DNA of 63,660 bases, the filler included, from Octopus bimaculoides (Eukaryota): the NCBI RefSeq assembly GCF_001194135.2. It is 6 parts of 4 records of this genome, joined end to end, with 100 filler letters (N's around TTAATTAATTAA, not from the genome) between each part and the next. Parts side by side here need not be neighbours in the genome. Positions count along the whole stretch, not along the records: positions 1 to 21,272 come from NC_068991.1; 5 more parts are not named here. One strand, given 5' to 3'. A program made the position numbers and the translations under genes. How positions within the stretch are numbered: position 1 is the first letter of the stretch; the number at the start of each line of letters is the position of its first letter. Below, piece by piece: positions 1 through 18,750 of the stretch. Under the pieces are notes generated by a model. The model was not told the DNA's origin. It made no database searches and saw only the letters and a list, made by a program, of their open reading frames with translations.

Positions 1-1356
1 TATATATATATATGTATATATGTATATATATATATATATACATATATATTAGTGTGTATTAGTTTGACGCTCGGGAAAATGAAAAAGTCTTTTCGAGCCT
101 ACGCTCTTCAACAGAAAGGACTAAGAGAAAATAAACAGAGAGAGAATGAAAAAAAAACTGTACATGTATGTTATATATGTAATTATATATTATACATATG
201 TAACTTTTACATATATTTTATATATGTAATATCTATGTATTTTATACATGTCGTCATATATTTTATATATGTAATTTGTACACACGGTGGTGCACCAGCA
301 TGACCGCAGCCACTTGGCTGAAACACATAAATAAATAAATAAAATGCTTATAACATAATGGATAAATAAAGTTTTAAAAATGTGTCAATAAATCTCCCTA
401 AATGTATAATGTGACAGCATTACTTAACGTAATTGCGTTAGGGGCCAAATTATTTGTTATTATACTGGACGAGTAATAAGTTTTTTTTTATTCAAACTGA
501 AATTTTATTGCTTGAAGCAAGATGGGTTTTTGTTTTTATACTGAATCATTTGTAATTTTTTTATATTATGACTGTAGGCTTGTAATTTTAAAATAATATA
601 TTAATGTGGATATCTGAAATTTTTTTAGTGGATTAATCTGTAATATTCGTATTATGTACCAATGAAGATATTTGTCTTGAGTGTAAAATATATTACTATA
701 TTCGTAGTTAAATTTAAATTATAAGTTCTAAGTACGCTATCTTCATTATATTAAATGATTATACATTTATAAATATACAAATAGAATTTATTAATTAATG
801 GTGATAACAACAACAACAACAATAATAATAATAAATGAATAATTTTATATTATGCCATATGGTGATCAAAAACTTTTCTATTGCAAGTACGAATTCCCAT
901 CTATTTTTCTGTAAGTAATTAATTTATAGATATATAAACTTAGATTTACAGAGATGTTTATCCGCCAATAAACTAAGTAATTTAGTATGTTGTACAAAGG
1001 AATAATGTTTATATAAATACAAATAAATAAATTTTAAAAATTATTATTTATAATTATATATTTTTAAATAATTATGCATATTTGTATTTATTTAGCTTAA
1101 TATATTTCATCAAGTGATGTTCTTTCGAGCTTCTATACATATAATAATTTATAGAGCAATATAACTATTGCCTTACTCTAATTTCGTTCCTTCCAAAAAA
1201 ACTTAGTAAAATTTTTTTTTTTTTATTTATAGCTTATTTTCTCTTTCTTTAAGAAATGATATAGTTTATAATTATCGTAGCTCTATATTTTTGTTTACTT
1301 TATTTACGGAGATTTTTCTTCTGGTAAACTAAGTAAACTGGTATCTTTACTTGTTA

Positions 1357-2728
1357 TCAGGTCATCCCATAAGTTCTGTCCAAATTTTGAATAAAGAAAA
1401 CAAGTGATGAAATATTATATTTGATTGAAATTTAATCATCAATGTACTTTCCCTGATTATCTATGACTTCCTTCCATCTATTTACAAGCTTTATAATCCC
1501 ATCAATGTGAAACTCTTTTGGTTTCAAAGCGAAGAACTCTGAAATGCCAGTTTCGACTTCCTCCTGGCTTGCGAAAGTTATGTCCCCCAAATGATTCTGT
1601 AAACTACAAAACAAATGGTAATCTGAAGGAGCAAGGTCAGGAGAATAAGGTGGATGAAGAATTTTTTCACATNNNNNNNNNNNNNNNNNNNNNNNNNNNN
1701 NNNNNNNNNNNNNNNNNNNNNNNNNNNNNNNNNNNNNNNNNNNNNNNNNNNNNNNNNNNNNNNNNNNNNNNNNNNNTCTTTGCCGTATGGGGTCGCGCAT
1801 TGTCCTGATGAAACATCACTCCTTTTCGATTCACTAAAGCGGGTCTTTTTCTCTTCAAAGCTTGGTTCAAACACTCTAATTGCTGACAGTAGACTTGAGC
1901 ATTGATTGTTGCATTAGGTGGTAACAATTCAAAGTGAATTACTCCTTTGCAATCCCACCAGATAGAGAGAAGAACCTTTTTCCCATGAAGTTCCCTTCTC
2001 GGTTGTGGTTGAGCGTTTTCTCTTTTACCAAGCCACTGTTTACGACGTTTAACATTTCGATAGAAGATCCGGTTTTCGTCACCAGTTACAAGTCTATCCA
2101 AAAAGGGTAAAATGAGTTCGCGAGAATGGAGAGAAGAGCAGATGTCAACTCGGGATTTGCGCTTGCTTTCGGACAATTTATGAGGCACCCATTTTCCAGG
2201 GTTTAGGAACCTTACGAAGTTGTTGAAGATGACGATGAACAGTTGTATGGTTTGAACAAAGCTTTATTGCCAATTCTTCAACTGATAGTGCAGGATTTTC
2301 TTCAAGTAATGCCTCAAGGAGCTTATCATCAAACTCAACTGGACATGCTGTTCGATCTTCATCTTCAAGGCTGAAATCTCCACTTCTGAATTTTGCAAAC
2401 CATCTTCTGCAAGCTCTTTCATTCAAGCATTCTTTCCCATTAAACTGAGTGTATGTTTCGAGTCGCTTCAGCTGCAGAGTTTCCTTTTTCTGTTTTTGTA
2501 CTCATAAAGCATTATGTGCCTTAAATGCTCTTTGGATACTTCCATGTTAGAAAGGGTTTTAATCAAAGAAATTTTAATTCTGTTATTCTGTAAAATAATA
2601 TATAATTAGTTTAAATGTACACAAATGCATAAAAATAACTTTTAATTCCATTAGACATTCTAAAATATTATTAAATTTCATTCAATTTTAAAAAGGTAAA
2701 ATCGGACAGAACTTATGAGATGACCTGA
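1357..2728 (-). mobile_element. Mariner (DD34D) transposon, full length, with both TIRs; transposase frameshifted
   Basis: 25-bp TIRs tcaggtcatcccataagttctgtcc (1357-1381) and ggacagaacttatgagatgacctga (2704-2728, 1 mismatch), each flanked by TA. Motifs LVTGDE, FHQDNARPH and HPPYSPDLAPSDYHLF are split over frames from ATG 2545 to stop 1432. An N gap lies at 1673-1776. Confidence 0.96.
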
Positions 2729-2739
2729 TAGTTACAGTT

Positions 2740-3690
2740 GTGGCGAGTGGTAGTGTCTCCAGTATGGAAAGCTATGCCAGGGCCGCTACGGCGAAGAAGC
2801 CAGTGCCGCTGGAAACTAAGTTGATCGAGCTGGATAGGGAGGAGGTGAGCAGAAGCAGGAATTTGATAGAGGTAGAGGGAGACTCATATAAATTGTTCCC
2901 CACTCCTGCCAAAAGAGACCAAGGAAGATAAAATACTGAGGACTGTTGTGCGTCGTACACAGGCTATCGAGACCAGTAAAATTCAAATGGTAATGGAAGA
3001 AGAAATCGAGGAGTGCCTGGGTGAAATTATAGATGAAGCCACGTACATCCGCAGAGGAAGAAAGTTCGATACGGTGGGGGTGAGGTTTGCCACCAGAGAA
3101 GAGGCAACCAACTGGTGGGGATTTGGATTCGAAACGTAGCTTTTTGTCACATTCGAGGACATAGAAAGAATTCCCTACCAGATAGAAGTGGAGGACGAGA
3201 GTACATTAAATGTCGTAGTTGAGGGAAGAAAGCCAAACTGTCACATATGCGGGGAGAGAGGCCATATGAAGACCAAATTCCCCCTATGAGTTTACACAGC
3301 CGGAACGAGAGAAAACGCAAACAGAGGAAGAAAACATTGCAGACCACACTGAGGAATCTAAAGAGAGACAGAGGTATAAAACAGAGGAAACAAAAGAGAA
3401 GAACAATAACGGGTCTTCTAGCCCTAAAAAGCGGAAGAAATATAAGTCAAAGGATCGGTCAACAGAGAACAAAAAAGAGACAGGAAAGCCAGAAACTAAT
3501 AATGTACAAGAAAAGGAGAGAATGGATAAAGATGTTAAATATAAGGGAATAACAAGAGTGAAGATGCCGGAAGCCTGTGCTGAGAAATGCATTTTGATAC
3601 GCGAGGAAAATTACTGGGAGTACATAAAAGAATTTGATGAGAATGTAACAGCGAAACGGGTTTAGTTGGTGGAGACCCCCCCCCCCTAGA
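2740..3690 (+). mobile_element. Tx1/L1-type non-LTR retrotransposon ORF1 relic
   Basis: SYARAA, YIRRGRKFDTVGVRFATREEA (RRM-like) and zinc knuckle NVVVEGRKPNCHICGERGHMK across broken frames; homologous to 37900-39300. Confidence 0.7.
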
Positions 3691-4754
3691 ACTGATTATT
3701 TACAGTTGATAAAGACGGAAGTAACAGTGATTAATGGGAGAAAAATAACGCGAATATTTCAATTTTTGGAGTTGCAAAACTGTTAAAATGTATGCATGGA
3801 GTTTAAGTAAAAGTGAAAAACTGGATAAATGTAACCACCCGACTTCGGGTGTCGAGTGGACATTGCGCCTCATTTTTTCATCCTTGCATATTGTCATTTT
3901 ATTTTAATTTTTCTTCTACTATCATCATTCGCTTTTTGTAATTTTTAGTTCCCCGATTTTATGTTTGTTGCGTTTTGTACTAAAGAGGCTTTTATACATA
4001 GAGAGGAATTTATATAAATTCATTACTGTATATAAGTCGAAACAAATTGTTGGCTTTATTTGTGTTTTTTGAAGATTTGTTATGTTATATTATATTACAT
4101 TATATTATAATGTAAATAAATTTTAGCTTGTCAATTGTTTTTCTCTATTTCATTTAATATTTGTTTATTATAATTATACCCTTTTATCTGTGGTATTCAC
4201 CTATTGTACCAGTGAATTGTAGGTTTACATCCCTTTGAAGGAAATGTTTTTTTCCTTCGTTTGATTTATATATACGCACACTCACACACAAACACACACG
4301 CACGTAGGCTCATTACTACACATTTTCTGCTGGTTTTCTGATCAGATTCATATAATTTCTGTGAATTACATCATTGCAGAAATTTCAACTCAGAATGAAA
4401 TCAAAATATTACACCAATTGGTTGTGAATCTCATTGTTCCTGTTGTCTCCTTAACACTCATTCACCTAGCATGGAAGCGGGCACAACATATACATCTCAG
4501 ATTTCAAAGGAACTCAAATAGACAAGAGTGGATAATCCTTTGCACAGGTGAAAAGTCAGGTGATTGATATTTGCACCACTATTCTTATAGTATAACAGCA
4601 AGACATAATCCTTAACAACCAGTGGCTGGTACCCATTAACCTTTTTCCTTTTACAGCAAGCCTACTTAATCAGTTGAAAGATAATGACGTAGCCCACCAG
4701 GAATGCAGAGGACCGAACTGACAAAGCAGATGAAGGGGACAAGTTGTTAACAAC

Positions 4755-4823
<69 letters not shown>

Positions 4824-4826
4824 AAG
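4755..4826. repeat. (AG)n microsatellite
   Basis: Direct reading. Confidence 0.95.
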
Positions 4827-5793
4827 AGTGGGCGCGAAATGTAGTGTCGATACAGTAATCTGAGAAGTAATTGTATAGCTATATAACTGGGTCTATGAAA
4901 TAGGAAAAACATTTGTGATTCACCATAATCAATGGATAAGTTACAATAGTTAACTCACTCATGTGCTGATGGGTCTTAACTAAGGAAGCAACGTGTTGAT
5001 AGATCTCATCACAAAGGAGAAATAGTTGAGGATGATTACAAGTTCGGTTAGATAGAAAATAGCAGAGATGCTACAATAATCCATAAATCAAATTTTCTAG
5101 AAAATATTTTATGTGGGAAATGAGTCATTTGTCATCATAAGGAAATGCAAAATTAAATTACACGTAAATTTAAACAATGAAAAATTCTTGAAAATATACT
5201 TACTGCCAAATAGGAGATGCCAGGAATAAAACATAACCAACAAATGCATCATGATTGCAGAATATTCCCAAAATTTATGCTCTGTCCAAAAACTATCTCA
5301 AGGTTTGACTCTTTCGTTTCTGACTCCTATTTATATTGTCAGCACAATTATTACATGGGTCAACCACCCTCTCAACACCCGCGTCAATTTAGGGTAGAGC
5401 TTAGCAACAACCGGGGAGAAGTATTAACACACCAAATAATTGCTTTCATTACATAAATTAATAGGTTATTTTACACCCCATCATTTCTAAATTGATCCCT
5501 GACATTTAAGGTGAATAAACGAATATTTGTTTATTTCATTATTCTTTCTAGTAAATTCTTATTGTTAAAACTACATAATCCATTCAATAAAAATTAGAAC
5601 CAATCTTAATAGGTTTTATTCTGGATAGCTAAATACTATAATAGTAATAATTAGCATAGTTTAAAATTACGCAATTCTGCATTTTGAAATGAACTAAATG
5701 GTTATTGTCTATTTATAGGTGATTCAGATTTCAAACATGATTTTAATTTTCGCCTATCAGGTACAGATTTTGCACAAATGGCTGCCAAATATA

Positions 5794-6122
5794 CAGGGTG
5801 TCCCAAAAGTTACAGATGGGTTTCAATTTTTAATAACTTCCTGAAGTTTATAAATAAATGTATGAAACTTTGATACAATATAAAGAACATAATGGAAATT
5901 AATATGGACAAGTCAAATTTTGTAACACTACACCATCACATATGAAAAAATGACATCGCTTAAATGCCAGTCATTTTCGGCTTCGCACGCCCGTGTTCTT
6001 TCCAAAACCACAACGCCCTCAAGAGTTTCAGACTCCACTTCTCTGATTTCTTTATTGATGTTCTCCTTCAGTTGCACCAGGGTCTCCGGTTTGTTGACGT
6101 AAACCCTCTCTTTCTGGTATAG
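5794..6122 (-). mobile_element. Tc1/mariner-superfamily transposon 3' fragment (transposase C-terminus + terminal repeat)
   Basis: YQKERVYVNKPETLVQLKENINKEIREVESETLEGVV...C....WHLSDVIF is a typical Tc1-like C-terminus. It ends in the terminal repeat cagggtgtcccaaaagtt with TA at 5792-5793. Confidence 0.85.
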
Positions 6123-6124
6123 AT

Positions 6125-6517
6125 TACTATAAACCAATGCATTTGTGTTATCATGTTCAATTCCTTGAATAAATGATCCTGTTGCATCGCCAGTCAAATG
6201 TCTGTCATTATCTTCTGTAACAGTTAATGAAGCATCAAAAACAGGAACACCTAAGAACTTCTCTTGTAAGCGTAAAACTTCTGTGCCTTCAGCTGTTTTG
6301 ATACGGTTTGACTCTTCAACTTCTTCATACTCCTTCAAACCAAGAAGATCTCTGACTGTTACTTCAGCTTTATCTAAATGACGCCGCTGAAACGGAGCTG
6401 GGGGATGATAAATCATCCTCCTTGCTCTTTCATGAGCATCAACACGATAAACCGTATCATACATTATTCCAATGTACGTAAAATAACAAAATATTTCAGT
6501 GTAATTAGTTGAAGCAT
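6125..6517 (-). pseudogene. M4-family (thermolysin/pseudolysin-like) metalloprotease N-terminus: signal peptide + FTP propeptide; frameshifted and truncated
   Basis: ORF 5928-6464 N-half reads LLGLKEYEEVEESNRIKTAEGTEVLRLQEKFLGVPVFDASLTVTEDNDRHLTGDATGSFIQGIEHD. This fits the FTP propeptide pattern (G..v.R.Q+.+.GvpV.g..l.v ... G.f+..+..D) as I recall it for LasB and vibriolysin. An ATG at 6517 gives MLQLITLKYFVIL, which joins TYIGIMYDTVYRVDA across a 1-nt frameshift near 6477-6482 (signal-peptide-like). A pyrimidine-rich acceptor (tttttcctattgcag) precedes 6622. No HExxH catalytic domain was seen in the window. Confidence 0.72.
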
Positions 6518-7269
6518 TGACTTATTACTTTATTTTCACAGGAAAAAAAATTATTAGCTTGTAAATTACACTTAATACCAAACATTATGTCGTTTAGCAA
6601 TTCTTTTTCTTGGTTAAATAATCTGCAATAGGAAAAAGATCAACTGTTGATGGAGAGAACGTGATGATTGCTGTGTGTTTTCAATTATAGCTTTGATATT
6701 TCTTATACTTGGGTCCATAATTCAGCTCTTCAACTAAATTATTTATCAGCCTTCTAAAAAATAAAAAGAGAAAGAAAGAGAGAAAATCAGAGAGAGAGAG
6801 AGAAGGGAGGCATCACTCAGTAAAATCCTGGTTTCAATAATGAGCATTTTGTTGTAGAAGGGTTTCCTGCTCATCTTTTCAGACTTCTAAATATCATTGA
6901 AGCATGAACCCATTATCTAAGAATATCCTTCTCTTTTGTATCTCCTAATTTCCATTGATTTTTATATTATCAATTTATTTCAATGAAGAAATACACCAGA
7001 AACAAATCGTTTCACAATTATTTCAAAAGAATAGATAAAAGACAAGTTAACAATTCTAAACACATTACAAATATTTTTTCTAGAGATTGCTTCTATTATA
7101 GCTCTTTTAGATTTGTACATCACTGCAATAATTATGAATGGCAATTGACACAAAAACTGTGATAAGTACTGCATTGTATTCTCAGAGAAATCGCTTAAAT
7201 CTTGGGCTCCTTGTGTCACTGTTCTCAACAAAGTTATATAACACTTAGATAATGAAATCCATTACTTCT

Positions 7270-7700
7270 AGCAATGACATTTTGCCCGTTGATTGCTAAG
7301 GCCATTATTTCCAGCAATGCTGCCGCAGGAACATTAGGTTATTAAAGCCATTGTTTCCTGTAAAGACTTTTAAATTTAGGGCGATAATGCCATTGATCCC
7401 GGTAAAGATACTTAAATTTAGATTACAAAGGGAATAGAACCCACCAATGAAAATTAACATTTAAGTTTCTAATGCAAACGCCAACGGCAAAGATGCTCAA
7501 CGCTTAAGTTTTCAAAAACATTGATCCACAGGAAGAGATTTAGTGTTAAGTTTACTAAAGCCATTGTTCTAAATGCATCCTACGTAATGTTTAGATTACT
7601 AAAGGCATTGTTAGCCAGTAAAGACACTAAGACTTTGCTTTTGCTAAAGCCATTCTTCCCTGAGAAGACACTTAATTCTGGGCTGCTACAGTTATGTATT
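7270..7700. repeat. Degenerate 42-46-bp tandem repeat (two blocks, about 7 units)
   Basis: The core ctaaagccattgtt recurs at about 7296, 7342, 7384, 7426, 7555, 7599 and 7644. Confidence 0.7.
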
Positions 7701-7769
7701 TCAGGAATGATATTTAACATTGTTCCCTGCAAAATCATGTACTCCCACTAATTCATATCTGGATTTACT

Positions 7770-9830
7770 TACACCCTTTTGAAGTGTCCACAAGCGCTCA
7801 GCTTGTCCGTTTGATCTTGAGTGATACGGAGGAGATATGATATTTTCAATTTAGAACATCTTTCAAAAATTCTTAAATTTATTCGCCGTAAATTGTATAC
7901 CGTTATCGATGATTATTTTGTCCGGGACACCATACTTTGCAAAAAGTTCATGTATAAAATTCCATGTTACCGTGTAGGTCGGTTTTCTGCATTTACACAT
8001 TTCTGGCCATTCTGTAGAGCTAGCTACCACTATTAAATAATATGATCCGTATAATGGTCTTGTGAAGTCTATGAGTAGCCTGGTCCAAGGAATATCAGTC
8101 TTGGGCCAAGGATGAAATTTTATAAGTACTGATTTTGCTGTAATAGCATAACCTCTGCAGGATTTTGCCAACTTCTCAATATCTAGTCCATATTCAACCA
8201 TTAAACATAACTCCTCATAAGCGACTTCATCCTAGAAATTCCTGGATATGCAGTGTGGAATTCCTTTAACATTCAATTTTGTAGTGAGACAAACATTACG
8301 ACCCTCTGTGTATGCATAATCACATTGTCGCATATCAAATACAAATTCGAAACTGTGTTTCGTCCAGCCACACGCTTTTTTTTTTATTTGTGTCTTCTGA
8401 TCTCACTATTTTTTCCTGTTCAGGATAAACTCTTCCGTCTCTGATTTAATTTTTATTTCCCACGAGGCAATTCACATACAACGTTGCACAATATATTTTT
8501 TATTACATTTTCGGCTTTTAACGCCGCTACCACTGAGTCTTCTAGTGGTTCATTATATTATGGTATTAACCTCGACAAACCATTTGCATGTTCCAATTTT
8601 TTAGATGACAAATACTCCACCTTGAAGTCATAATTTAGTAGGATGGCTCCCCAGCGCTGCAATCTGTTGGCAGTATGTGTGAGGATATCCTTTTTTGATC
8701 CATTGATCGACAATAATGGGCGGTGGTCTGTCTGCAAGTGGTATCTTCTTCCATGTATAAATTTATGGAATAGTTTTACAGCATATATGATGGCTAATGC
8801 ATCTTTCTCTCTTTCGCTACAACTTTCATCAGCCGGCAATAAGGAACGCGAAGCATGAGCTACAGCTTTCAGGCTACCATCTTCATATTTGTGTAAAATC
8901 ACAGCTCCAATACTACTTCCACTAGCTTGTGATGCCACTACTATTTCTGAATTCAAGTAGAAATGTGACAATGACAATTCCGAAGTTAAAATGTTTTTAA
9001 TTTCTTCAAAATTTTGTGGCACTTGTCCGACCAGTTCCATTTAACATCTTTTTTCAACAAGTTATTCAGGGATGCTCTTAAATCATACATCTTCGCTATG
9101 CGTACCTGGTAGCAATTTGCGAGCCCCCAAAATGCTTGTAATGTTGTAATGTTTGTGAGGGGAGGCAGATTTTTATTGCACTCGCTCTTCACGAATCTGG
9201 TCTGCGTCTATTTTCATCGATAATCTGCCCTAGATGTAATAATCTTGAGATTCCCATTTGATGAGTACGTCGTCAAATTACACTATAGCGAAATGCGAAC
9301 CTGCGGTTAAAGTATCCATAGCTTGTTGGAAAATGCCTGGTGCTACATTTATACCAAACTGAAGTTGATTAACTCTATACTATCTTTTAGCATTTATAGT
9401 TTGAACATTCTTTATCAATTTATACCTGCAGGTATGTTTCAGATAAACCCAATTTTGAAAAAGGTTTTCCACCATTCAACTTCACAAAAATGTCTTTTGG
9501 ACTTAGTAACAGGCAATTATATGGCATCAAACATTTGTTTGACCCTATTGAAAAATCAGCACATATTATTTTTCTCCTGACATAGCTGTTGTAGATGCCC
9601 ATTTAATGTAATTAATTTTTTCATTAACCTCAAGCGTTTCAAGCCTATGCAATTCTTTATTGACTTATTTCAACGCTACGAAAGGTACAATTAGTTTCAG
9701 TTTAAATACCGGTATAGCGTTTTCTTTTACTTGAAACTTCACTTTTGTTTTGGTGCAAAGACCTAATTCATCATTAAAAAAATTTCAGGAAAAATCTTTT
9801 TCAATTTTTAAAAATTCCTCCGACGCCTTA
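7770..9830 (-). mobile_element. Gypsy/Ty3 LTR retrotransposon pol relic (RT-RNaseH-integrase)
   Basis: ELGLCTKTKVKF, DIFVKLNGGKPFSKL, RNaseH AVAHASRSL / LAIIYAVKLFHKFIHGRRYHLQTDHRPL, and integrase PWTRLLIDF, YGVPDKIIIDNGIQF, PYHSRSNGQAER. RT-RH-INT order indicates Gypsy. Many stops and frameshifts; no LTRs found. Confidence 0.93.
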
Positions 9831-9877
9831 TTTATTTACTTATTTATTTATTTATTTATTTATTTTTGATCCTTGTA

Positions 9878-9955
9878 ATGACCCTGTGAAGTCTATATGT
9901 AGCCTGGTCGAAGGAATATCAATCTTGGGCCAAGGCTGAAATTTTATAGGTGCTT
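9878..9955 (-). mobile_element. Second short Gypsy integrase fragment
   Basis: tgtgaagtcta..tagcctggtc.aaggaatatca.tcttgggccaagg.tgaaattttata matches 8061-8136. Confidence 0.75.
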
Positions 9956-10004
9956 ACAAAAATTTTTAAAAAAAGAGAATTATGGAGAGGTATCATAAGT
10001 TCAA

Positions 10005-10177
10005 TAATTCCATCAAGTCTGTTCGGAATACCCCAGTGCGTAACTGGGTACTTAATTTATCGATCCCGAAAGGTTGAAAGGCAAAGTCGACCTCGGCTGA
10101 ATTTGAACGTAAAGACAGACGAAATACCGCTAATCAGTTCGCCCGGCGTGCTAACGTTTCTGCCAGCTCGCCGCCTT
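10005..10177 (-). mobile_element. Family A tRNA-derived SINE
   Basis: Reverse complement of aaggcggcgagctggcagaaacgttagc...cctttcgggatcgataaattaagtaccag. Confidence 0.88.
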
Positions 10178-10560
10178 TTTAAGTAAGTTTATTGTATTTT
10201 ATTTTATATTATATTATTTTTTACATACAATGTATATGAAATAACATCTTAAACTTCTTTAGCTGTGAATTTCAATTCCAATAAGTAAGATGTAACCTTC
10301 GTTATTATTAAAACAAAAACCCTGAAGAGATTCTACCCTTTACAGCTTAAATTCTTAACACTGGATTTAACCCAAATGCTTTAAATTATACATTACTAAG
10401 GGGCCAGAATCGAAACATATGTAGGTTTTTTTGAGTCTTCTATTGTGTTTTTTTTTTTAATTTATTTGTATTTATATCTTAAAAACAAATTATGATGCAA
10501 ATAAATTAGCTATACATCTTTAACTCTCCATTTCCTTACATTATTAATTTTCCCTCTGTG

Positions 10561-10602
<42 letters not shown>

Positions 10603-11514
10603 CATGTATGCATGTATGTAAGTATGTATATGTATAAACACACATGTATGTGTGTATGCATCAGCAGACCTGTAACAGAAAGGCTAGGTTGCATAAAATA
10701 TTTCGTGTAGAAAATGAGTCATTTGTCATCATAAGAAAATAAAATTGTTACATATATACTGATAATAGATTATTTTAGACCCTATTAATTCTGAATCGGT
10801 ACTTGACATTTAAGGTGAAATAACAAGGTTTTTGTTTATTTATTTATTTATTTATTCTTCCTCATTAATTCTTATTGCCAAAGCTATAGAATTCATTTAA
10901 TAAAAATAGGGAGCAATCTTTATAGATCACATTCAGGGAGACAAAATACTATAATAGCAATAATCAGCATAGATTAACATTAATAATAATTTATACTCTT
11001 TTCCACACCATATTATTTTAGTGTTTGAAATAGCCTTCACCCATTCCTCCAATAAAATTCTCTCCAGCGTCGTAGATGTCTGAAAAAGTAAAAAACCCAA
11101 AACAAAAACTATCCATTTGACCAACCATAAGCAGATACAGCATATTTCTTTGCTTAAGCTAATTACAATGAGCCAGGACAATTGTCTTATGAAACGGGGC
11201 AATTTTTAAAATCTATTACATTTTAGGTTTTTGTCAATAGGCAAATATTTCTTTTACTAAATTACTATAACATGAAATACTATAACCAAAATGTTATAAC
11301 TTGCTAAAAATATATTATAACTTGGTTTCTGCATTATAACACGGTTTCTGCATTCAAAGTTATTCAATGATTTTAAATAATAGTTTTGGAACTGGCACAA
11401 AGGAATAACAATGCTTCTCCTTTATTTGAAAGGTTTTTAATAAAGATAAACCCACAAAATTAACTATACTTTAAACAGTAACCATCTCTGGGCTGATTTA
11501 ATATTCCAGTAAAG

Positions 11515-13104
11515 AACTCTAGATGTAAATGGAAACTAATTACTAGAGATCAAGAAGATTAACATTAATGGAGACTTCATTTACTTCAGCAGAGATTTTA
11601 AGTCTAGAATGAATAATAAAATGATAAAACGATGGCAAGAAAAGCCCCTACATGGTAAATACTGGGCTAAACTAAATGCGAAAGAAATAGACAGAGAAAA
11701 ATCCCAGCAATGGCTGAGAAGCTCAGGACTCAAAGCAGAGACTGAAGGATTTTTAATTGCTGCACAAGACCAGAGCCTCCCCACCAGAAATTACCAAAAA
11801 CACATAATGAAAAGAAATATAACAAGTAACTGTAGAACATGTGGAGATGGACAAGAAACAATAAATCATATTATCTCTGGCTGCCCAGTCCTGGCTAAGA
11901 AGGAATATATTCACAGACACGACAGAGCTGGGACCTATATACACTGGAAGCTATGCCAACACTATGGAATNNNNNNNNNNNNNNNNNNNNNNNNNNNNNN
12001 NNNNNNNNNNNNNNNNNNNNNNNNNNNNNNNNNNNNNNNNNNNNNNNNNNNNNNNNNNNNNNNNNNNNNNNNNNNNNNNNNNNNNNNNNNNNNNNNNNNN
12101 NNNNNNNNNNNNNNNNNNNNNNNNNNNNNNNNNNNNNNNNNNNNNNNNNNNNNNNNNNNNNNNNNNNNNNNNNNNNNNNNNNNNNNNNNNNNNNNNNNNN
12201 NNNNNNNNNNNNNNNNNNNNNNNNNNNNNNNNNNNNNNNNNNNNNNNNNNNNNNNNNNNNNNNNNNNNNNNNNNNNNNNNNNNNNNNNNNNNNNNNNNNN
12301 NNNNNNNNNNNNNNNNNNNNNNNNNNNNNNNNNNNNNNNNNNNNNNNNNNNNNNNNNNNNNNNNNNNNNNNNNNNNNNNNNNNNNNNNNNNNNNNNNNNN
12401 NNNNNNNNNNNNNNNNNNNNNNNNNNNNNNNNNNNNNNNNNNNNNNNNNNNNNNNNNNNNNNNNNNNNNNNNNNNNNNNNNNNNNNNNNNNNNNNNNNNN
12501 NNNNNNNNNNNNNNNNNNNNNNNNNNNNNNNNNNNNNNNNNNNNNNNNNNNNNNNNNNNNNNNNNNNNNNNNNNNNNNNNNNNNNNNNNNNNNNNNNNNN
12601 NNNNNNNNNNNNNNNNNNNNNNNNNNNNNNNNNNNNNNNNNNNNNNNNNNNNNNNNNNNNNNNNNNNNNNNNNNNNNNNNNNNNNNNNNNNNNNNNNNNN
12701 NNNNNNNNNNNNNNNNNNNNNNNNNNNNNNNNNNNNNNNNNNNNNNNNNNNNNNNNNNNNNNNNNNNNNNNNNNNNNNNNNNNNNNNNNNNNNNNNNNNN
12801 NNNNNNNNNNTGTGGAATCTAAAAACAGAAACAATTCCTATCATAGTAGGTGCCTTAGGTATAATAAAAAAATATTCAGACAAATACATAACAAAAACAC
12901 CAGGACTTACAAATATATATAACATACAGAAAATTGCACTACTGGGTACTGCACACATTCTACGCAAAACACTTTCAATACAGTAAACATAAGAGCACCA
13001 CAGCAAACCACAGCACATACCCAAGGCGCACAGAGCTGCGCTCGGTAGTGAAGTGAAAGCACGTTATAAAAATAAAACTACTGAATAATAATAATAATAA
13101 TAAA
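11515..13104 (+). mobile_element. Dong/R4-clade (restriction-like endonuclease) non-LTR retrotransposon, 5'-truncated 3' end
   Basis: WQEKPLHG, ETEGFLIAAQDQ, CRTCGDGQETINHIISGC knuckle, RHD motif, C-terminal IVGALG...LGTAHILRKTL, a 3' UTR and a (TAA)n tail. An N gap lies at 11971-12810. Confidence 0.92.
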
Positions 13105-13339
13105 AAATTATTAATCTATTTTTTACTTGTTAATTTTAAAATTAATTTAATATTTTTCTTGTAGTTAATTTTATTCAACTTAGGCTTCGTTTTCAACTCT
13201 CTAAAATTTTACTTTAATTTATGTTGGGTTTTGATTTAATTAAGTTCTTTATTTGTTATAATTTACTTAATTTTAATTTTAATAGGATGTATCATGCAAT
13301 TATTTAAATCTCTTAAAGGTACACTTCGATTGATGAATA

Positions 13340-15480
13340 CATCTTAACGTGCTTCCTTGCCTATGATTTTTCAAATTAAATTTTGATGTAAGAATTTAGT
13401 AAATTTCTTCTACAAATGTTCACAGCGTTTACTTCCTCTACTATACGGCTTGGCTCTACTAATTATCTCCCAGTTAATTGTATATTCTTTACTATTATCT
13501 TTTATTGACCAAATTAATGTACTTAAACTCGTACTATCTTTCTTATTTCTATCCCTAAACGATAGTTCGGGATTAGCTATTCTACGTTTAATAAAGGTCT
13601 CGCTAGCACCTATGATGAAATACACCTGTCCCTCTGAAATAACTTTACACCTGTACAGTTTCTTTAATTTTGACGGGCATAATTTGTTTGTTGCGCAATC
13701 ACAACTCTTTTCCCTAATTCTACTTTCTTTATCTCCTTTTACTACTTGATATTTTATATTCCTAGTTTCGTTCATTTTATGCTCTAATTTATTTACTCAT
13801 GTTTTTTATTTTCAAGATTTTGGGTACCACTTTCCTTTATAGTGTTTGAGTTAGTACTCGCTACATCTCTATCATTAATTTCCCTGTTACTACGCATTTG
13901 GTTACTATCTCTATTTTGATTACTTATTTTCTCATTGCTGCTCTTTCTAGCGTGCATATTTACTCTCTCTAACGCCGTCATAGAGTTTTTATCAGTTACT
14001 TCCCTTGCACTATTTGCTTTATTATATTTATTATTCGAGATGTTACCTCCACCAACCACACCCATTTCGTTACAATTATATATTAAATTTTGGTAATAGT
14101 TAATTTCCTTCTCGTAGAAATTATTTAATGATTTCGCGCTTTGTGTTGTGATTTTACTGTTTGAAAAAGCTATTCTCATTTTATGTGCGTTAAAAATTTG
14201 ATAATACCTGCTATATTTCGGAAAATATTTTTTAACAGCCAAATAGAATAATTTTGGAACGTTACAACTAATTTGTTTACCAAAGAAAATAATATACCAT
14301 TCTGTGTTATCACATAGTTTATCTTTAGAGAGGTTATTATTATTCATACTAGATGTGTTTTTTTTATGTCTCTGGTTTGCATATTTAGGATGCTTTACAT
14401 CATATTCCCTATCTGTTGTAGTATTTTTGATAGGAGGGTTTATATACTTATTATCAGTCCTATTTGAGAGCTTTATACGAAAGTTTTTATTTATAGGTTT
14501 ACTTGTTAGTTTATACGGTTCTATTTTATTAGTGTCATTGCTATTCTCTTTACTGTGTATTATTCAATTTTGTTGTGGCTGTGTGGTAAGTAGCTTGCTT
14601 ACCAGCCACATGGTTCCGGGTTCACTTCCACTGCGTGGCATCTTGGGCAAGTGTCTTCTACTATAGCCTCGGGCCGACCAAAGCCTTGTGAGTGGATTTG
14701 GTAGATGGAAACTAAAAAAAGCCCGTCGTATATATGTATATATATGTATATGTGTGTGTGTGTTTGTGTGCCTGTGTTTGTCCTCCTAGCATTGCTTGAC
14801 AACCGATGCTGGTATGTTTATGTCCCCGTCACTTAGCGGTTCGGCAAAAAGAGATCGATAGAATAAGTACTAGGCTTACAAAGAATAAGTCCCGGGGTCG
14901 ATTTGCTCGACTAAAGGCAGTACTCCTGCATGGCCGCAGTCAAATGACTGAAACAAGTAAAAGAGTAAAAGAGTATCATGACATTATTTTTATCCTTACT
15001 ATTTTAAATTCCATATAATCTTAAACTATTATTACTTATTATTTTAAATTATCTTTCTTATTATCATCATTACCAATATCTATGTATTCTTTTATTAAAA
15101 TCTTAACTTTTCTCTGTATCTTGCCCTTCTCAGTGCTAGGTTGTAAAAGTTTTCATTTTGCTTAAAGATTTCTTCATTGGCAGATAAGTTCGAAATACCT
15201 GCAGACACATTTTCAACTATTTTCTGGGTTATACTTCTAGGATGAGTGCTGTTTCTGTTGATGTATCTTAAGTTTATGCTAGGTTTATCGTAAGGTTTGT
15301 ATGTTCCCTCACTGAGATATAAAGTAATATCGAGGAAGTTAGCGGAATTGTGTTCGTTTTCAATAGATATGGATAACCTATATTCTTAAAAAATTTGAAG
15401 AATCTTTTCTTATACTTATCAATCTGACTATTAGAGGAGTTACCCAGAGTGAAAAATGCATCATCTTTATTTAGACCCCA
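13340..15480 (-). mobile_element. Penelope-like element (RT C-half, linker, GIY-YIG endonuclease), interrupted by a SINE
   Basis: RT GLNKDDA...NFLDITLYLSEGTYKPYDKP...STHP (15100-15480); linker NVPKLFYLAVKKYFPK...IFNAHKMRIAFS; endonuclease CDCATNKLCP...IIGASETFIKRRIAN...TSLSTLIWSIK...INWEII...CEHL (13410-13775). Confidence 0.85.
14574..14985 (+). mobile_element. CORE-type SINE (family B), full length
   Basis: Head tgtggctgtgtggtaag; CORE-like ttgggcaagtgtcttctactatagcc; internal microsatellite; tail gcatggccgcagtcaaatgactgaaacaagtaaaaga. Confidence 0.88.
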
Positions 15481-15489
15481 CTCCCAACT

Positions 15490-15900
15490 CAGGAAATTCC
15501 CTACTTAATCTAAACAGTATATAAATGCCTACTAAGTCTGTAACCACCATAGGACCAAATGGGCAACCAAACGTGCGAATGTATGAGGGAGCAACTGAAG
15601 ACCCTTCAGTACCCGCTATAACAACCACGAGTCCTCTTTCAACATCCCAGAGAGACGTAACGTCACAACCTTGGCCAAGCACGTCTGGTCTTTGAAAGAA
15701 AGTTCCACCGAGCACAGCATAAAGTGGAAGATCCTAGAGAAATGTAAACCGTACTTCAATAGTAGCAGGAGGTGCAGGTTATGCATGACTGAGAAAAGAG
15801 TGATTTTAAAGTGCAACCAACACCCAGGTATTTACCTGAATAGCAGAAGTAAAATTTAGTTGTTGCTTACATGAAAGGAAGTACATCCTATCATACCTGC
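15490..15900 (+). mobile_element. Second Penelope-like element, GIY-YIG endonuclease fragment
   Basis: YEGATED..TRYNNHESSF...TTLAKHVWSLKE...IKWKILEKCKPY...CRLCMTEKRVI...LNSRS; opposite orientation to 13340-15480. Confidence 0.88.
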
Positions 15901-16325
15901 GTTCCCCATCATGACTATAACCACCAGTTCCCCAACGTCGGCCTTCCACCTAATACCCTGGAGTCAGGCAAAGAGTTTGACCAGAACATACACTAACGCA
16001 GCCACAAACATACACGCTCTGACACTTACCCAATAGACGGCAGACACTTACCCAATAGACTGTTTTCCGGCACCCCCAGTATAAGTTCTCATACACATTC
16101 TACTCCTACATTCACCGCATGCAAACTTAAAGGCCCACGAAATTAACCAATACATGAAAGAAAGAAAACATGCTAACGAACACATATGTGTATGCCCACA
16201 CCCGCTGTAGTATACCATTTACTGGAAAAATTATAAAGTCTAAATAATTAAAAAACTAAAATACCTAAATTATGCATAAGTTAAACTAAATTTCTATAAT
16301 TTAATCTATTTTCATTAATTTACAG

Positions 16326-18750
16326 AAAAATTTGGCTAGAACTGCAGGCAACGAAAAAGAAAAACAGAACTTTTTGTGGAAATGATGGACGATCTCTTTG
16401 ACATAGCTCATTCAGATGCTTTGGGACAGATGAAAATTGAAGAGGATAAGAAGCTCTTAATGTTTCAGCGCCAAAAGAGATGACTGGGCTCTATGGTTGG
16501 TGTAGATCAAAAACTAAAACACAAGTAAGAAAGAGCACTGAAGTGCACTTCAATGGAAACTGTCAGGAAAAAAGCTCCTATGAAGAAATAGAACAAAATT
16601 TTGCTATTCATCAGTTTGCTACATCAGAAACTGATGATTCAACATCAAGCAGCCAAAGCAGTGGTGGTGGTGACGACAATGAAAATTCTTGTCATCGTTC
16701 AGCAAGTAACAGCAACAGCAACAACCGCAGCAGCAATAACTGTTCCAGCAACTCGAGTTACATAGTAGTTTTTTTACTCCCCGTCTCTCTGAAGTTTTTG
16801 ATAGTTGCAAAATTACTGACAGGAATGGCGGTTACATATTAATGGCTGCTGCAGAGGGTTTCAGGCGTGATACTGAAAACCTGGTAATAAATCGCACTTC
16901 TTTTCAACGCCTTAGAAAAAAATTTAGAGAAGCGAGACACAGAAACACAGCACAAATTTAACCTAAACGACTGTCAAGAATTAGTGTTGCACTGAAATGG
17001 AAAGCTGCTCCCAGCACTCACAGGCGTTGAAAAGGTTGATATACTGGCAATAATAGTAACTTTTCAAGGCAAGGAGCAATTGCTTGGAGTCCCTGAAACT
17101 CCAACATCTTCAGGAGAACAGCAAGCAATTGGCTGTTTACCAAACAGTGGAGAAATGGGGTATAACTGACAAAATTCAAGTACTTTTCTGTGATACGACA
17201 ACAAGCAACACAGGTCGAGTAAATGGTGCCTGTATAAATCTAGAAAAATTGTTCAATTGCGACCTGTTGTATTTCCTTTGCCATCGTCACATTTTTTAGT
17301 TAGTTTTTAGGAGCTGTTTCGACTCACTGATGGGTGCAACTTCTGGTCGAGACAAAAGATTTGGAGAAACGTAACCTAGACGAAACTCAACAAGAAGGTT
17401 TACATAACTGGTAGCAACGTAGTACCTAATGATGTCTGCTCTACCATTCTTGGATTTCTTAAATACTATATTTCTACGCAGAAATAACAGCGAGATGATT
17501 ACCGAGAATTGATGGCGTTAACGATGATCTTTCTTCACAGCATTCCGAAGAATGGGATATCATTTCGTATGCCAGGAGCTGTAGGTCATGCTAGATGAAT
17601 GTCAAAAGCAACTTATACATTCAAGATTTACCTGTTTCAAGATCAATTTCAGTTATCTCTTGGGGATTCTTTAAGAAGAATATGTATTTTTCTTGCTCGA
17701 GTGTACGTTCGAGCCTGGTTTCTGTCATCAGAAGCAATTAAAGCACCTTATCCTGATTTCCTATTCATGCATCGACTGATAAATTATCAGGATATTGATC
17801 CAGAAATCAGTAAGGTTGCTGTGAAAACATTTTCCAGCCATGTCTTGTACTTAGCTCCCAAAACTGCTCTATCCATATTTGATGACAATGTTCCAACAAA
17901 GGGTAAAGCAAATATTGTTCAACTTATTCTGGAAGCAGACAAAGGTGAAGAAGAGGAAGAAGCAAAAAACCAACTGAAGTGGTACATTCTGCACCAAAAT
18001 TACTTTTCTTCCCTTACAAACATCGACTTTTCGTCTTTTGTAACTCCTGCTACAAAACTTTCTTCACGAGATATTCTATCAGTACCGATTTGCTCGACAC
18101 AACACGGAAGGATTATTCTGGTTACAAAAGTGGACTTGAAAAACATGAGAAGACAGTTGTTGTGAATGATGTTGCAGAAAGAGGTACCAAACGCTTTCAG
18201 GATTGCAATAACATTCTCACAAAAGATGAAACTGAGAAACAATTTGTTTTACGGGTCGTTACCGAAAACCGTAAAACACACCCAACTACCACTAAATCCT
18301 CTCTTATGCAAAAGTAATGTTCAATATCCAGTGTTCAGTGTTCACGTTATGTAATCGATTCTAGAGAAATTATTGTTGTAAATAAAAATGCGTTTCTCTT
18401 ATAGAAGTTGTGTGCTTTACTAAGAAAACCTAATATTTCTTAGGTTTTTCGTGCTATTTCAAATTTGATTCAGAACGTTTTTAAACATTTGTTGGGGTTG
18501 CCTGGATGTGTCCACATAAATTTCTCTAAGAAAAAAGAAAATGGTCGAGATTGGGAACAGTATACTGCTTTTGAACAGAATTAATCGTTGCGTATACTAT
18601 GTTCCAACTTCAAGGCGTTTGGAGGTCGCCTAGCAGTTGTCCGATTGAGCTAAAATTTTGCACACAGCGGTTTTTTTTGTTGATTGAAACAAGATCAGGG
18701 AGAGGAGCAGCAAAATTTTAATTTACGGAAAATAAACTATTGCACAGTCG
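16326..18750 (+). mobile_element. hAT-like (probably hATm-type) DDE DNA transposon, degraded, 5' end missing
   Basis: MDDLFDIAHSDAL..KIEEDK, LVLHxNGKLLP, LLGVPxL, FCDTTTSNTGRVNGAC, LCHRHIF (CxxH), RDDYRELM, PGAVGHARxM and VVNDVAERGTK; stop near 18317. Subfamily label is from memory. Confidence 0.75.

What the first reader, a model, noticed from the sequence alone, without database searches (positions are those of the whole stretch)
6125..6622. Bacterial-type M4 (pseudolysin/vibriolysin-like) metalloprotease propeptide exon in an animal genome
Seen: the minus-strand peptide GTEVLRLQEKFLGVPVFDASLTV...TGSFIQGIEHD, a signal-peptide-like start (ATG 6517) reachable by one frameshift, and a spliceosomal-type acceptor before 6622. 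Established: the FTP propeptide is characteristic of secreted M4/M36 proteases, which are mainly bacterial or fungal; LasB has a similar R.EQ..NGV.V...SG.FV..IA.D segment (recalled, not searched). Inference: this is a relic of an intron-bearing, secreted protease gene of possible ancient horizontal origin, and it may mark a lineage-expanded digestive or salivary protease family. It is the only recognisable non-TE protein in the window.
Basis: partly seen in the sequence, partly recalled or inferred. Interest (0 to 1): 0.72.

Follow-up and report, generated by a model that had tools for sequence, protein, structure and literature searches.

The report
Dead fragment of octopus M4 protease gene
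The peptide is real, but it is a broken 322-base leftover copy of the front end of an octopus thermolysin-type (M4) protease gene. It lies just upstream of an intact copy, and the family and its bacterial origin in octopus are already published.

Summary
The window is Octopus bimaculoides chromosome CM046611.1, 100% identical to a fetched locus. The minus-strand peptide at 6464..6135 is a true homologue of the N-terminal (FTP) propeptide of M4 zinc proteases. It is 86-92% identical to intact ~650-aa Octopus proteins that carry HExxH, and 76% identical to the Argonauta protein.

It is not an exon of a working gene. DNA homology to the family's large exon 2 covers only 6459..6138. The segment has no demonstrable acceptor and no signal peptide, and nothing past codon ~130 of ~650 is present. 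It is the last recognisable piece of a decayed tandem gene unit (about 11089 to 6138) whose TATA box and signal-peptide exon are deleted.

The intact neighbour is ZnMP4 of a 2018 paper. Its real signal-peptide exon lies at 5252..5204. Its exon 2 begins inside a 1,108-N assembly gap flush with the window's left edge. The NCBI gene model (protein P0023, 723 aa) grafts the dead fragment on as first coding exon, most likely because of that gap.

Seven M4-type 'ZnMP' genes of this octopus were published as ancient bacterial transfers, with RT-PCR from hepatopancreas (PMC6011040). The finding is ordinary and already known.

The parts
6138..6459 (-). Truncated copy of the 5' part of exon 2 of an octopus M4 protease gene. 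It corresponds to family residues ~25-131: the N-terminal propeptide with the FTP motif, but no PepSY-like part and no catalytic domain.
   Evidence: blastn gives 96.1% to O. sinensis L004 14805-15115, 95.6% to L005, 94.5% to O. vulgaris L006, 92.2% to O. bimaculoides ZnMP5 (L003), and 95.3% over 215 bp to the neighbouring ZnMP4 exon 2.
6135..6464 (-). Stretch used by the NCBI model P0023 ('neutral protease', 723 aa) as its first coding exon (aa 1-110). The ATG at 6464 is fortuitous, the predicted donor GT is at 6134-6133, and the product has no signal peptide.
   Evidence: P0023 aa 1-110 are 100% identical to this stretch.
6111..6137 (-). 27-bp junction of unknown origin between the M4 stub and the next block.
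   Evidence: It matches neither the paralogues' exon 2 nor the O. vulgaris flank.
5928..6110 (-). Non-M4 sequence that happens to stay in frame and lengthens the ORF to 178 aa. It is probably the C-terminal relic of a transposase; that reading is from memory and Pfam gave no hit.
   Evidence: No Pfam hit. The same block sits upstream of the orthologous O. vulgaris gene: window 6110-4813 matches L006 9114-10439 at 89.5%.
5204..5252 (-). Genuine signal-peptide exon (MMHLLVMFYSWHLLFG + 1 nt) of the intact neighbour gene ZnMP4. The donor GTAAGT starts at 5203 and the intron is phase 1.
   Evidence: tblastn of P0022 aa 1-17. The alignment with five paralogous signal exons is and the sequence.
5328..5335 (-). 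TATAAATA box conserved upstream of the signal exon in all paralogues. It is the probable core promoter of ZnMP4.
   Evidence: Alignment, sequence. That it is the promoter is an inference.
1..5203 (-). Intron 1 of ZnMP4, containing a mariner-type element. It runs into a 1,108-N assembly gap at the window's left edge, and that gap hides the start of ZnMP4 exon 2.
   Evidence: Window position 1 equals L002 16464. L002 16465-17572 is N, and exon 2 resumes at 17573 with ..RDLLGLKEYEE.
1307..1375 (-). Cryptic 23-codon mini-exon (NLWDDLITSKDTSLLSLPEEKSP). The NCBI model uses it to bridge from the dead fragment to the post-gap part of exon 2. No other family member has it.
   Evidence: P0023 aa 111-133 are 100% identical to it. 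AG and GT flank it.
10770..11089 (-). Decayed unit A: homologue of the region upstream of the signal exon.
   Evidence: 70-76% identity to L004 9457-9774, L005 and L003.
10684..10744 (-). Decayed unit A: homologue of the first 60 nt of intron 1. The ~330 bp that should lie between 10770 and 10744 (TATA box plus signal exon) are missing.
   Evidence: 80-89% identity to L003-L006 10096-10163.
7019..7312 (-). Decayed unit A: homologue of the 3' part of intron 1, which lies ~400-700 bp upstream of exon 2 in O. sinensis.
   Evidence: 71-72% identity to L004 14084-14353 and L005 14565-14836, collinear with the exon-2 stub.
7863..9040 (-). Retrotransposon pol remnants (RNase H, integrase core) inside unit A's former intron.
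   Evidence: Pfam RT_RNaseH 2.5e-21 and rve 2.8e-4. O. sinensis shares the block: L004 2838-4023, 85.5%.

Best explanation
The segment is a non-functional stub of a duplicated gene. Octopus M4 ('ZnMP', elastase/neutral-protease-like) genes sit in tandem clusters. Each unit has a TATA promoter, a 49-nt signal-peptide exon, one phase-1 intron of 2-13 kb, and a single ~1.9-kb exon that encodes propeptide (FTP plus a PepSY-like part), catalytic domain (HExxH ... NEAFSD) and a C-terminal extension.

The window holds the wreck of one such unit (about 11089 to 6138, minus strand). Its promoter and signal exon are deleted, a retrotransposon sits in its intron, and exon 2 is cut off after about codon 130 and joined to unrelated, probably transposon-derived, DNA. 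Only 322 bases of coding sequence survive (6459..6138). They stay open by chance and have picked up six replacements at positions otherwise constant in Octopus.

The stub lies 0.9 kb upstream of the promoter and signal exon of the intact neighbour ZnMP4. It has no start codon of its own lineage, no demonstrable splice acceptor, no secretion signal and no catalytic part, so it most likely does nothing. NCBI's gene model uses it as exon 1 most likely because an assembly gap hides the true start of ZnMP4's exon 2.

Shown: homology, extent, missing parts, collinearity, the gap, identity with the gene model. Inferred: order and timing of the decay, lack of function, and why the model was built that way.
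For: - The window is 100% identical to O. bimaculoides GCA_001194135.2 CM046611.1.
- The two-exon structure is seen in Argonauta, O. sinensis (two genes), O. vulgaris and O. bimaculoides ZnMP5.
- Exon-2 homology is limited to 6459..6138.
- No other M4 coding sequence or 3' flank occurs anywhere in the window, even at tblastn E<=10.
- Homologues of the upstream region, intron start and intron 3' part lie in collinear order, and TATA box plus signal exon are lost.
- The intact signal exon of the neighbour is at 5252..5204, with conserved TATA box and GTAAGT donor.
- A 1,108-N gap sits directly before the rest of ZnMP4 exon 2.
- P0023 equals the stub, plus the mini-exon 1375..1307, plus post-gap exon 2.
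- There are six fragment-specific replacements, including a family-conserved Gly changed to Arg. dN/dS against paralogues is 0.39-0.49, versus 0.0-0.33 among most functional pairs.
- The O. vulgaris orthologous flanks are conserved on both sides (about 90%) but the M4 stub is absent there.
- The published ZnMP4 cDNA amplicon matches the neighbour's exon 2 at 99.05% (PMC6011040).
Against: - The 110-codon frame is still open, and the stub is only 4-5% diverged from functional copies, so recent death, gene conversion or residual use cannot be told apart.
- The dN/dS counts are small (4-9 synonymous, 6-14 replacement differences) and overlap the values for ZnMP4 itself (0.57 on 3 differences).
- An NCBI model does include the stub, and I could not inspect RNA-seq support for it.
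- Loss of the splice acceptor is not proven: an in-register TTATTTTAC|GT against the paralogues' TTTTTTAG|GT is suggestive but not significant.
- The assembly is short-read based and has gaps nearby.
Confidence: 0.85

Rival explanations
1. The stub is a working alternative first coding exon, as in the NCBI model P0023. Transcription would start upstream of 6464, and splicing 6135 to 1375..1307 to exon 2 would give a non-secreted isoform with a partly duplicated propeptide.
For: P0023 is built exactly this way. GT and AG dinucleotides exist at the predicted junctions. The frame is open for 110 codons.
Against: - The third junction uses a 'cag' that is the first three bases after a 1,108-N gap, so the model's acceptor is set by the gap.
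- The product lacks the signal peptide that every family member has, and it repeats residues 38-110 of the propeptide.
- The mini-exon is absent from all other family members.
- A canonical promoter and signal exon for the same gene lie between the stub and exon 2.
- O. vulgaris lacks the stub at the orthologous site.
Confidence: 0.04
2. The stub was never part of a whole gene unit. It is a small ectopic insertion, an exon fragment captured during double-strand-break repair or carried by a mobile element, that entered the ZnMP4 upstream region in the O. bimaculoides lineage.
For: The 505 bp between 6615 and 6111 are specific to O. bimaculoides, while both flanks are about 90% conserved in O. 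vulgaris. Homology starts inside the exon, without a demonstrable intron end. Unexplained filler lies on both sides (6460-6615 and 6111-6137).
Against: Sequences homologous to the gene's upstream region, intron start and intron 3' part lie upstream of the stub in the right order and at roughly the right spacing: 558 bp from the intron block to the stub, against about 440 bp in O. sinensis. That is what a decayed whole unit predicts. O. vulgaris has 1.3 kb of other, transposon-like sequence at the site, so loss there is equally possible.
Confidence: 0.08
3. The stub is an assembly artefact: reads from another M4 paralogue, or from the gap-hidden start of ZnMP4 exon 2, were wrongly joined into this contig.
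For: The assembly is short-read based with N runs at 1673-1776, 11971-12810 and at the window edge. The true 5' end of ZnMP4 exon 2 is missing from the assembly.
Against: The stub sits in a gap-free block, 1777-11970. It differs from ZnMP4 exon 2 at 10 of 215 overlapping bases, so it is not the same sequence. Its own unique substitutions and truncation match no fetched paralogue.
Confidence: 0.03

Closest known systems
O. bimaculoides ZnMP4 (XP_014776937.1 in PMC6011040; current NCBI model P0023 'neutral protease') and its Octopus paralogues and orthologues (P0022, P0024, P0025, P0026)
   Same: The stub is 92-96% identical in DNA to the first ~320 nt of their exon 2 after its first ~20-35 nt. 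It lies in the same tandem cluster, 0.9 kb upstream of ZnMP4's own signal exon.
   Different: It lacks promoter, signal exon, demonstrable acceptor, the PepSY-like half of the propeptide, the catalytic HExxH/NEAFSD domains and the C-terminal extension. It carries six private replacements.
Pseudolysin (LasB pro-elastase, PDB 8cr3) and vibriolysin Mcp02 (PDB 3nqy/3nqz), MEROPS family M4
   Same: These are the closest solved relatives of the intact octopus proteins (8cr3 E=3e-87, covering propeptide and catalytic domain). The propeptide profile containing the window peptide aligns to the Mcp02 propeptide residues 13-99 and to LasB 46-118. In these enzymes the propeptide acts as folding chaperone and inhibitor; that is established knowledge and was not tested here.
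   Different: The bacterial genes have no introns and carry their own signal peptide. The octopus genes carry the signal peptide on a separate exon. The window holds only part of the propeptide.
Unprocessed (duplicated) pseudogene fragments in tandem gene clusters
   Same: It is a partial copy next to a functional paralogue, with regulatory and terminal parts lost, transposons inserted, and coding sequence that is still recognisable.
   Different: Nothing notable. The frame happens to remain open, which misled gene prediction.

Membership tests
Pfam FTP (PF07504), fungalysin/thermolysin propeptide motif | Score at or above the Pfam gathering threshold (21 bits) | tested here: inconclusive
   20.0 bits, E=6e-4, residues 52-87: just below the cut-off.
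Pfam FTP (PF07504), fungalysin/thermolysin propeptide motif | Homology to propeptides of proven M4 enzymes | tested here: met
   20 of 21 aligned homologues hit FTP (best 3.8e-10). The profile hits Mcp02, thermolysin and LasB propeptides.
MEROPS M4 / Pfam Peptidase_M4 + Peptidase_M4_C (thermolysin family) | Catalytic domain with HExxH and the third zinc ligand in NExxSD | tested here: not met
   No catalytic-domain sequence anywhere in the window (tblastn with 145 family proteins). The motif is present in the paralogues and in the neighbour beyond the gap (HEFAH...NEAFSD in P0023, HELAH in P0022).
MEROPS M4 / Pfam Peptidase_M4 + Peptidase_M4_C (thermolysin family) | Secretion signal preceding the propeptide | tested here: not met
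   The stub's first in-frame Met gives MYDTVYRVDAHERARR, which has no hydrophobic core. The family signal peptide is on a separate exon, and unit A's copy of that exon is deleted.
Octopus HGT-derived Zn-metalloproteinases (ZnMP1-7, PMC6011040) | Sequence membership in the cephalopod ZnMP4/ZnMP5 clade | tested here: met
   86-92% aa and 92-96% nt identity to the clade members. The published ZnMP4 and ZnMP5 amplicons map at 99% to the adjacent gene and to L003.
Octopus HGT-derived Zn-metalloproteinases (ZnMP1-7, PMC6011040) | Complete two-exon gene unit (signal exon plus ~1.9-kb exon) | tested here: not met
   Only 322 nt of exon 2 remain and the signal exon is lost.
Functional exon | Homologous splice acceptor, and expression | not testable with these tools
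   An acceptor is not demonstrable. No read data are available. The exact 178-aa ORF product is not on record in the assembly collection.

The most novel reading that the evidence does not exclude
The open 110-codon stub is transcribed and translated on its own or as in the NCBI model. That would give a non-secreted, FTP-only propeptide fragment that acts as an intracellular inhibitor or chaperone decoy for the neighbouring M4 zymogens, since M4 propeptides are known inhibitors of their enzymes.
Probability: 0.03. Interest if true: 0.45.

Novelty: already known. Interest (0 to 1): 0.15.

Why it matters
It matters little as biology. It is one more decayed duplicate in a tandem cluster whose family and bacterial ancestry are already in the literature. 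There are two practical points.

1. The NCBI model P0023 for O. bimaculoides 'neutral protease' is most likely a gap-induced chimera. It should not be used for signal-peptide, domain or phylogenetic work.

2. The loci show a uniform gene plan across octopods: a bacterial-type body in one exon and the secretion signal on a separate small exon. The same M4 clade is present in bivalves and gastropods and separates cleanly from the sampled bacterial sequences. That is consistent with one old acquisition followed by gain of a eukaryotic leader exon.

Tried and rejected
- Word-index search with the 113-aa peptide found nothing. The exhaustive search found 21 relatives and later searches found 86-100% identical Octopus proteins, so one search was a false negative of the index.
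- Single-sequence PDB search and NCBIfam gave no hit. A profile was needed.
I replaced it with tblastn of all family proteins against the window.
- I tested whether the copy includes the intron end and acceptor. Local alignment of 6460-6519 and 6460-6619 against the paralogues' intron ends was no better than shuffles. I therefore dropped the 'AG to AC acceptor mutation plus 4-nt deletion' reading that the MAFFT alignment had suggested.
- I looked for the rest of exon 2 or its 3' flank elsewhere in the window and found none.
- I looked for the exact ORF product in public assemblies, including transcriptome-derived ones. It is not on record.
- dN/dS was computed but the counts are too small to be decisive.
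- Pfam gave no hit for the 65-aa tail at 5928-6124, so calling it a transposase relic rests on memory only. I ran no further search on it.
- Literature searches for M4 or thermolysin in cephalopod salivary or digestive glands found nothing specific. Only the HGT data paper is relevant.

Full report
WHAT IS THERE

The minus strand of the window carries a 178-codon ORF at 5928..6464. Pfam places an FTP propeptide motif at residues 52-87, but at 20.0 bits, just under the gathering score of 21. NCBIfam and a single-sequence PDB search gave nothing. A word-index protein search also gave nothing; later results showed this was a false negative.

HOMOLOGY

An exhaustive phmmer scan of 1.84 billion representatives found 21 relatives.
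- The best is a 649-aa Argonauta hians protein, E=3e-45, 76% identity, matching its residues 25-129.
- Pfam on the hits shows FTP, Peptidase_M4 and Peptidase_M4_C.
- Searching with that protein brought in intact ~650-aa proteins from Octopus sinensis, O. bimaculoides and O. vulgaris. NCBI names them elastase, neutral protease, virulence metalloprotease or protease-like.
- The same search found bivalve and gastropod proteins at 35-40% identity, then Vibrio, Shewanella, Pseudoalteromonas, Photobacterium and others at 32-40%.
- tblastn shows the Octopus proteins are 86-92% identical to the window peptide over 106 residues.
- A 21-sequence profile of the propeptide region, with the window peptide as first row, hits the solved propeptides of vibriolysin Mcp02 (3nqy_A, 5e-13), thermolysin (5a3y, 8e-9) and LasB pro-elastase (8cr3, 2e-5).
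- 20 of the 21 profile members hit Pfam FTP.
- The intact O. sinensis protein's best solved relative is LasB pro-elastase (E=3e-87).

WHERE THE WINDOW COMES FROM

One O. bimaculoides model, P0023 ('neutral protease', 723 aa), is 100% identical to the window over its residues 1-110 (6464..6135). It is again 100% identical over residues 111-133 (1375..1307). The locus that encodes it, L002, is from GCA_001194135.2, CM046611.1. It is 100% identical to window 1..16464 in reverse orientation, so window position w equals L002 position 16465-w. This places the window at about 51,460,402-51,481,673 of that chromosome.

GENE PLAN OF THE FAMILY

Each protein maps as two blocks in Argonauta (L001), O. 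sinensis (L004, L005), O. vulgaris (L006) and O. bimaculoides ZnMP5 (L003).
- Residues 1-17 lie on a small exon.
- Residues ~18-650 lie in one uninterrupted exon of about 1.9 kb, which follows 2-13 kb downstream.

The small exon is preceded by a conserved TATAAATA box. It ends ...TTT GGC A|GTAAGT, which makes the intron phase 1.

THE NEIGHBOUR GENE

The window contains such a signal exon at 5252..5204 (MMHLLVMFYSWHLLFG plus 1 nt). Its TATA box is at 5335..5328 and its GTAAGT donor starts at 5203.

Its exon 2 lies beyond the window's left edge. L002 16465-17572 is a run of 1,108 N, and directly after it the sequence resumes mid-exon with ..RDLLGLKEYEE and runs uninterrupted to the stop (P0023 residues 134-723). 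The start of exon 2 is therefore hidden in an assembly gap.

The NCBI model replaces that missing start with two pieces: the upstream stub, and a 23-codon mini-exon (1375..1307, flanked by AG and GT) that no other family member has. It then enters exon 2 at a 'cag' that is the first three bases after the gap. I read this model as a gap-induced chimera. That reading is an inference.

EXTENT OF THE STUB

blastn limits DNA homology with the paralogues' exon 2 to 6459..6138.

| Compared with | Identity |
|---|---|
| O. sinensis L004 | 96.1% |
| O. sinensis L005 | 95.6% |
| O. vulgaris L006 | 94.5% |
| O. bimaculoides ZnMP5 (L003) | 92.2% |
| Visible part of the neighbour's exon 2 | 95.3% over 215 bp |

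- At the 3' end, homology stops at AAT GCA (6138). A 27-bp filler follows.
- From 6110 there is a block also found upstream of the orthologous O. vulgaris gene: window 6110-4813 matches L006 9114-10439 at 89.5%. This block keeps the frame open by chance. It looks like the C-terminal end of a transposase; that is from memory, and Pfam gave no hit.
- At the 5' end, a MAFFT alignment suggested an in-register intron end with AG changed to AC and a 4-nt deletion. Alignment of 6460-6519 or 6460-6619 to the paralogues' intron ends scores no better than shuffles: 29-382 and 72-488 of 500 shuffles reach the observed score. I therefore do not claim this.
- The ATG at 6464 lies outside the homologous part.
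- The frame opened by ATG 6517 (MLQLITLKYFVILRTLE*) bears no likeness to the family's signal peptides.
- The 'acceptor' before 6622 lies in sequence that continues unbroken in the O. vulgaris orthologous flank up to 6616.
- No further M4 coding sequence, and no 3' flank of exon 2, is present anywhere in the window.

CONTEXT: A DECAYED GENE UNIT

Upstream of the stub on the gene strand lie homologues of the other parts of a gene unit, in the right order.
- The region upstream of the signal exon: window 11089-10770, 70-76% to L003, L004 and L005.
- The first 60 nt of intron 1: window 10744-10684, 80-89%.
- The 3' part of intron 1: window 7312-7019, 71-72% to L004 14084-14353 and L005 14565-14836.
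- The stub itself.

Between 10770 and 10744, about 330 bp are missing. Those bases hold the TATA box and signal exon in every intact unit. Retrotransposon pol remnants (RNase H 2.5e-21, integrase core 2.8e-4) sit in the former intron. O. sinensis shares this block (L004 2838-4023, 85.5%).

The simplest reading is a former tandem copy that lost its promoter and leader exon and most of exon 2.

In O. vulgaris both flanks are conserved: window 7760-6616 matches L006 6698-7811 at 90.5%, and window 6110-4813 matches L006 9114-10439 at 89.5%. The 505 bp that hold the stub are replaced there by 1.3 kb of other, transposon-like sequence. So either each lineage eroded the old copy differently, or the stub entered later as a small insertion. 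I rank the second reading lower.

STATE OF THE CODING SEQUENCE

- Six replacements are private to the stub at positions otherwise constant among the Octopus copies: S to P, K to N, G to R, T to S, D to H and I to N. The Gly lies in a well-conserved column of the family alignment.
- Nei-Gojobori dN/dS of the stub against the paralogues is 0.39-0.49. Most functional pairs give 0.0-0.33.
- The counts are small, and ZnMP4 itself gives 0.57 on three differences. This fits relaxed constraint but is not decisive.
- The stub's 4-5% divergence is of the same order as one lineage's share of the ~10% non-coding divergence between O. bimaculoides and O. vulgaris. It has probably drifted since about that split. 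This is an inference.

WHAT IS ALREADY KNOWN

PMC6011040 (Data in Brief 2018) lists seven O. bimaculoides 'ZnMP' genes among twelve genes judged to be horizontally transferred from bacteria. It reports RT-PCR products from hepatopancreas mRNA. [quoted passage not shown]
- Its ZnMP4 amplicon matches the neighbour's exon 2 at 99.05% (L002 18354-18669).
- Its ZnMP5 amplicon matches L003 at 98.96%.
- ZnMP1 is P0007.

The family, its bacterial affinity and its expression in the digestive gland are therefore published.

My own quick neighbour-joining tree used 63 sequences and 576 columns. It separates all 20 named mollusc sequences from all 18 named bacterial ones in 100 of 100 bootstraps, with cephalopod, gastropod and bivalve subclades. 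This is compatible with one old acquisition. The tree is unrooted and thinly sampled.

VERDICT

It is a dead 322-bp stub of a known, published gene family, mis-annotated as a first exon because of an assembly gap. Interest is low and the novelty rating is 'already known'.

Noticed in passing
window 6135-6464, 1307-1375 and the left edge (L002 16465-17572): The NCBI model P0023 ('neutral protease', 723 aa, O. bimaculoides) looks like a chimera. It joins the dead stub, a cryptic 23-codon mini-exon, and exon 2 entered at the first 'cag' after a 1,108-N gap. The gene's real signal exon (5252-5204) is skipped.
   Followed up: yes
window 1432-2426 (-), with the N run 1673-1776: A mariner/Mos1-type transposase (HTH_48 hit; DDE-type ORFs) lies inside ZnMP4 intron 1. 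The same element sits at the orthologous place in O. vulgaris (L006 12474-13423, 92%), so the insertion predates the species split.
   Followed up: partly
L007 10001-13022 (CM046611.1, about 16 kb downstream of ZnMP4): The next cluster member, P0032 ('hemagglutinin/proteinase-like', 432 aa), has M4 sequence only from family residue ~290 onward, fused to about 130 unrelated N-terminal residues. A PIF1-helicase ORF lies directly upstream, and orphan signal-exon copies lie at L007 7410-7475 and 18823-18888. The cluster is full of partial copies.
   Followed up: partly
L006 4839-4889: O. vulgaris carries an extra, orphan signal-peptide exon copy about 5 kb upstream of the real signal exon of P0025, with no exon 2 after it. 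This is another decayed unit.
   Followed up: partly
ZnMP4 exon 2 (L002 ~18450) and O. vulgaris P0025: ZnMP4 and its O. vulgaris orthologue have HEFAH in the zinc motif, where the other octopus paralogues have HELAH.
   Followed up: no
exon-2 5' region of all Octopus copies: Synonymous divergence in the propeptide region is very low between species and between paralogues (dS 0.015-0.06), while the adjoining introns are only 70-90% identical. This points to gene conversion or unusual constraint on this stretch.
   Followed up: no
window 11609-12922 (+), with the N run 11971-12810: An ORF with a zf-RVT domain (reverse-transcriptase zinc-binding region, 6e-6) is interrupted by an 840-N assembly gap. 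It is a non-LTR retrotransposon remnant.
   Followed up: no
PMC6011040, methods: The paper says its 'O. bimaculoides' animals were collected at Shenzhen, China, outside that species' range as I recall it. Even so, its ZnMP4 and ZnMP5 amplicons are 99% identical to the Californian reference genome.
   Followed up: no
   Followed up: no
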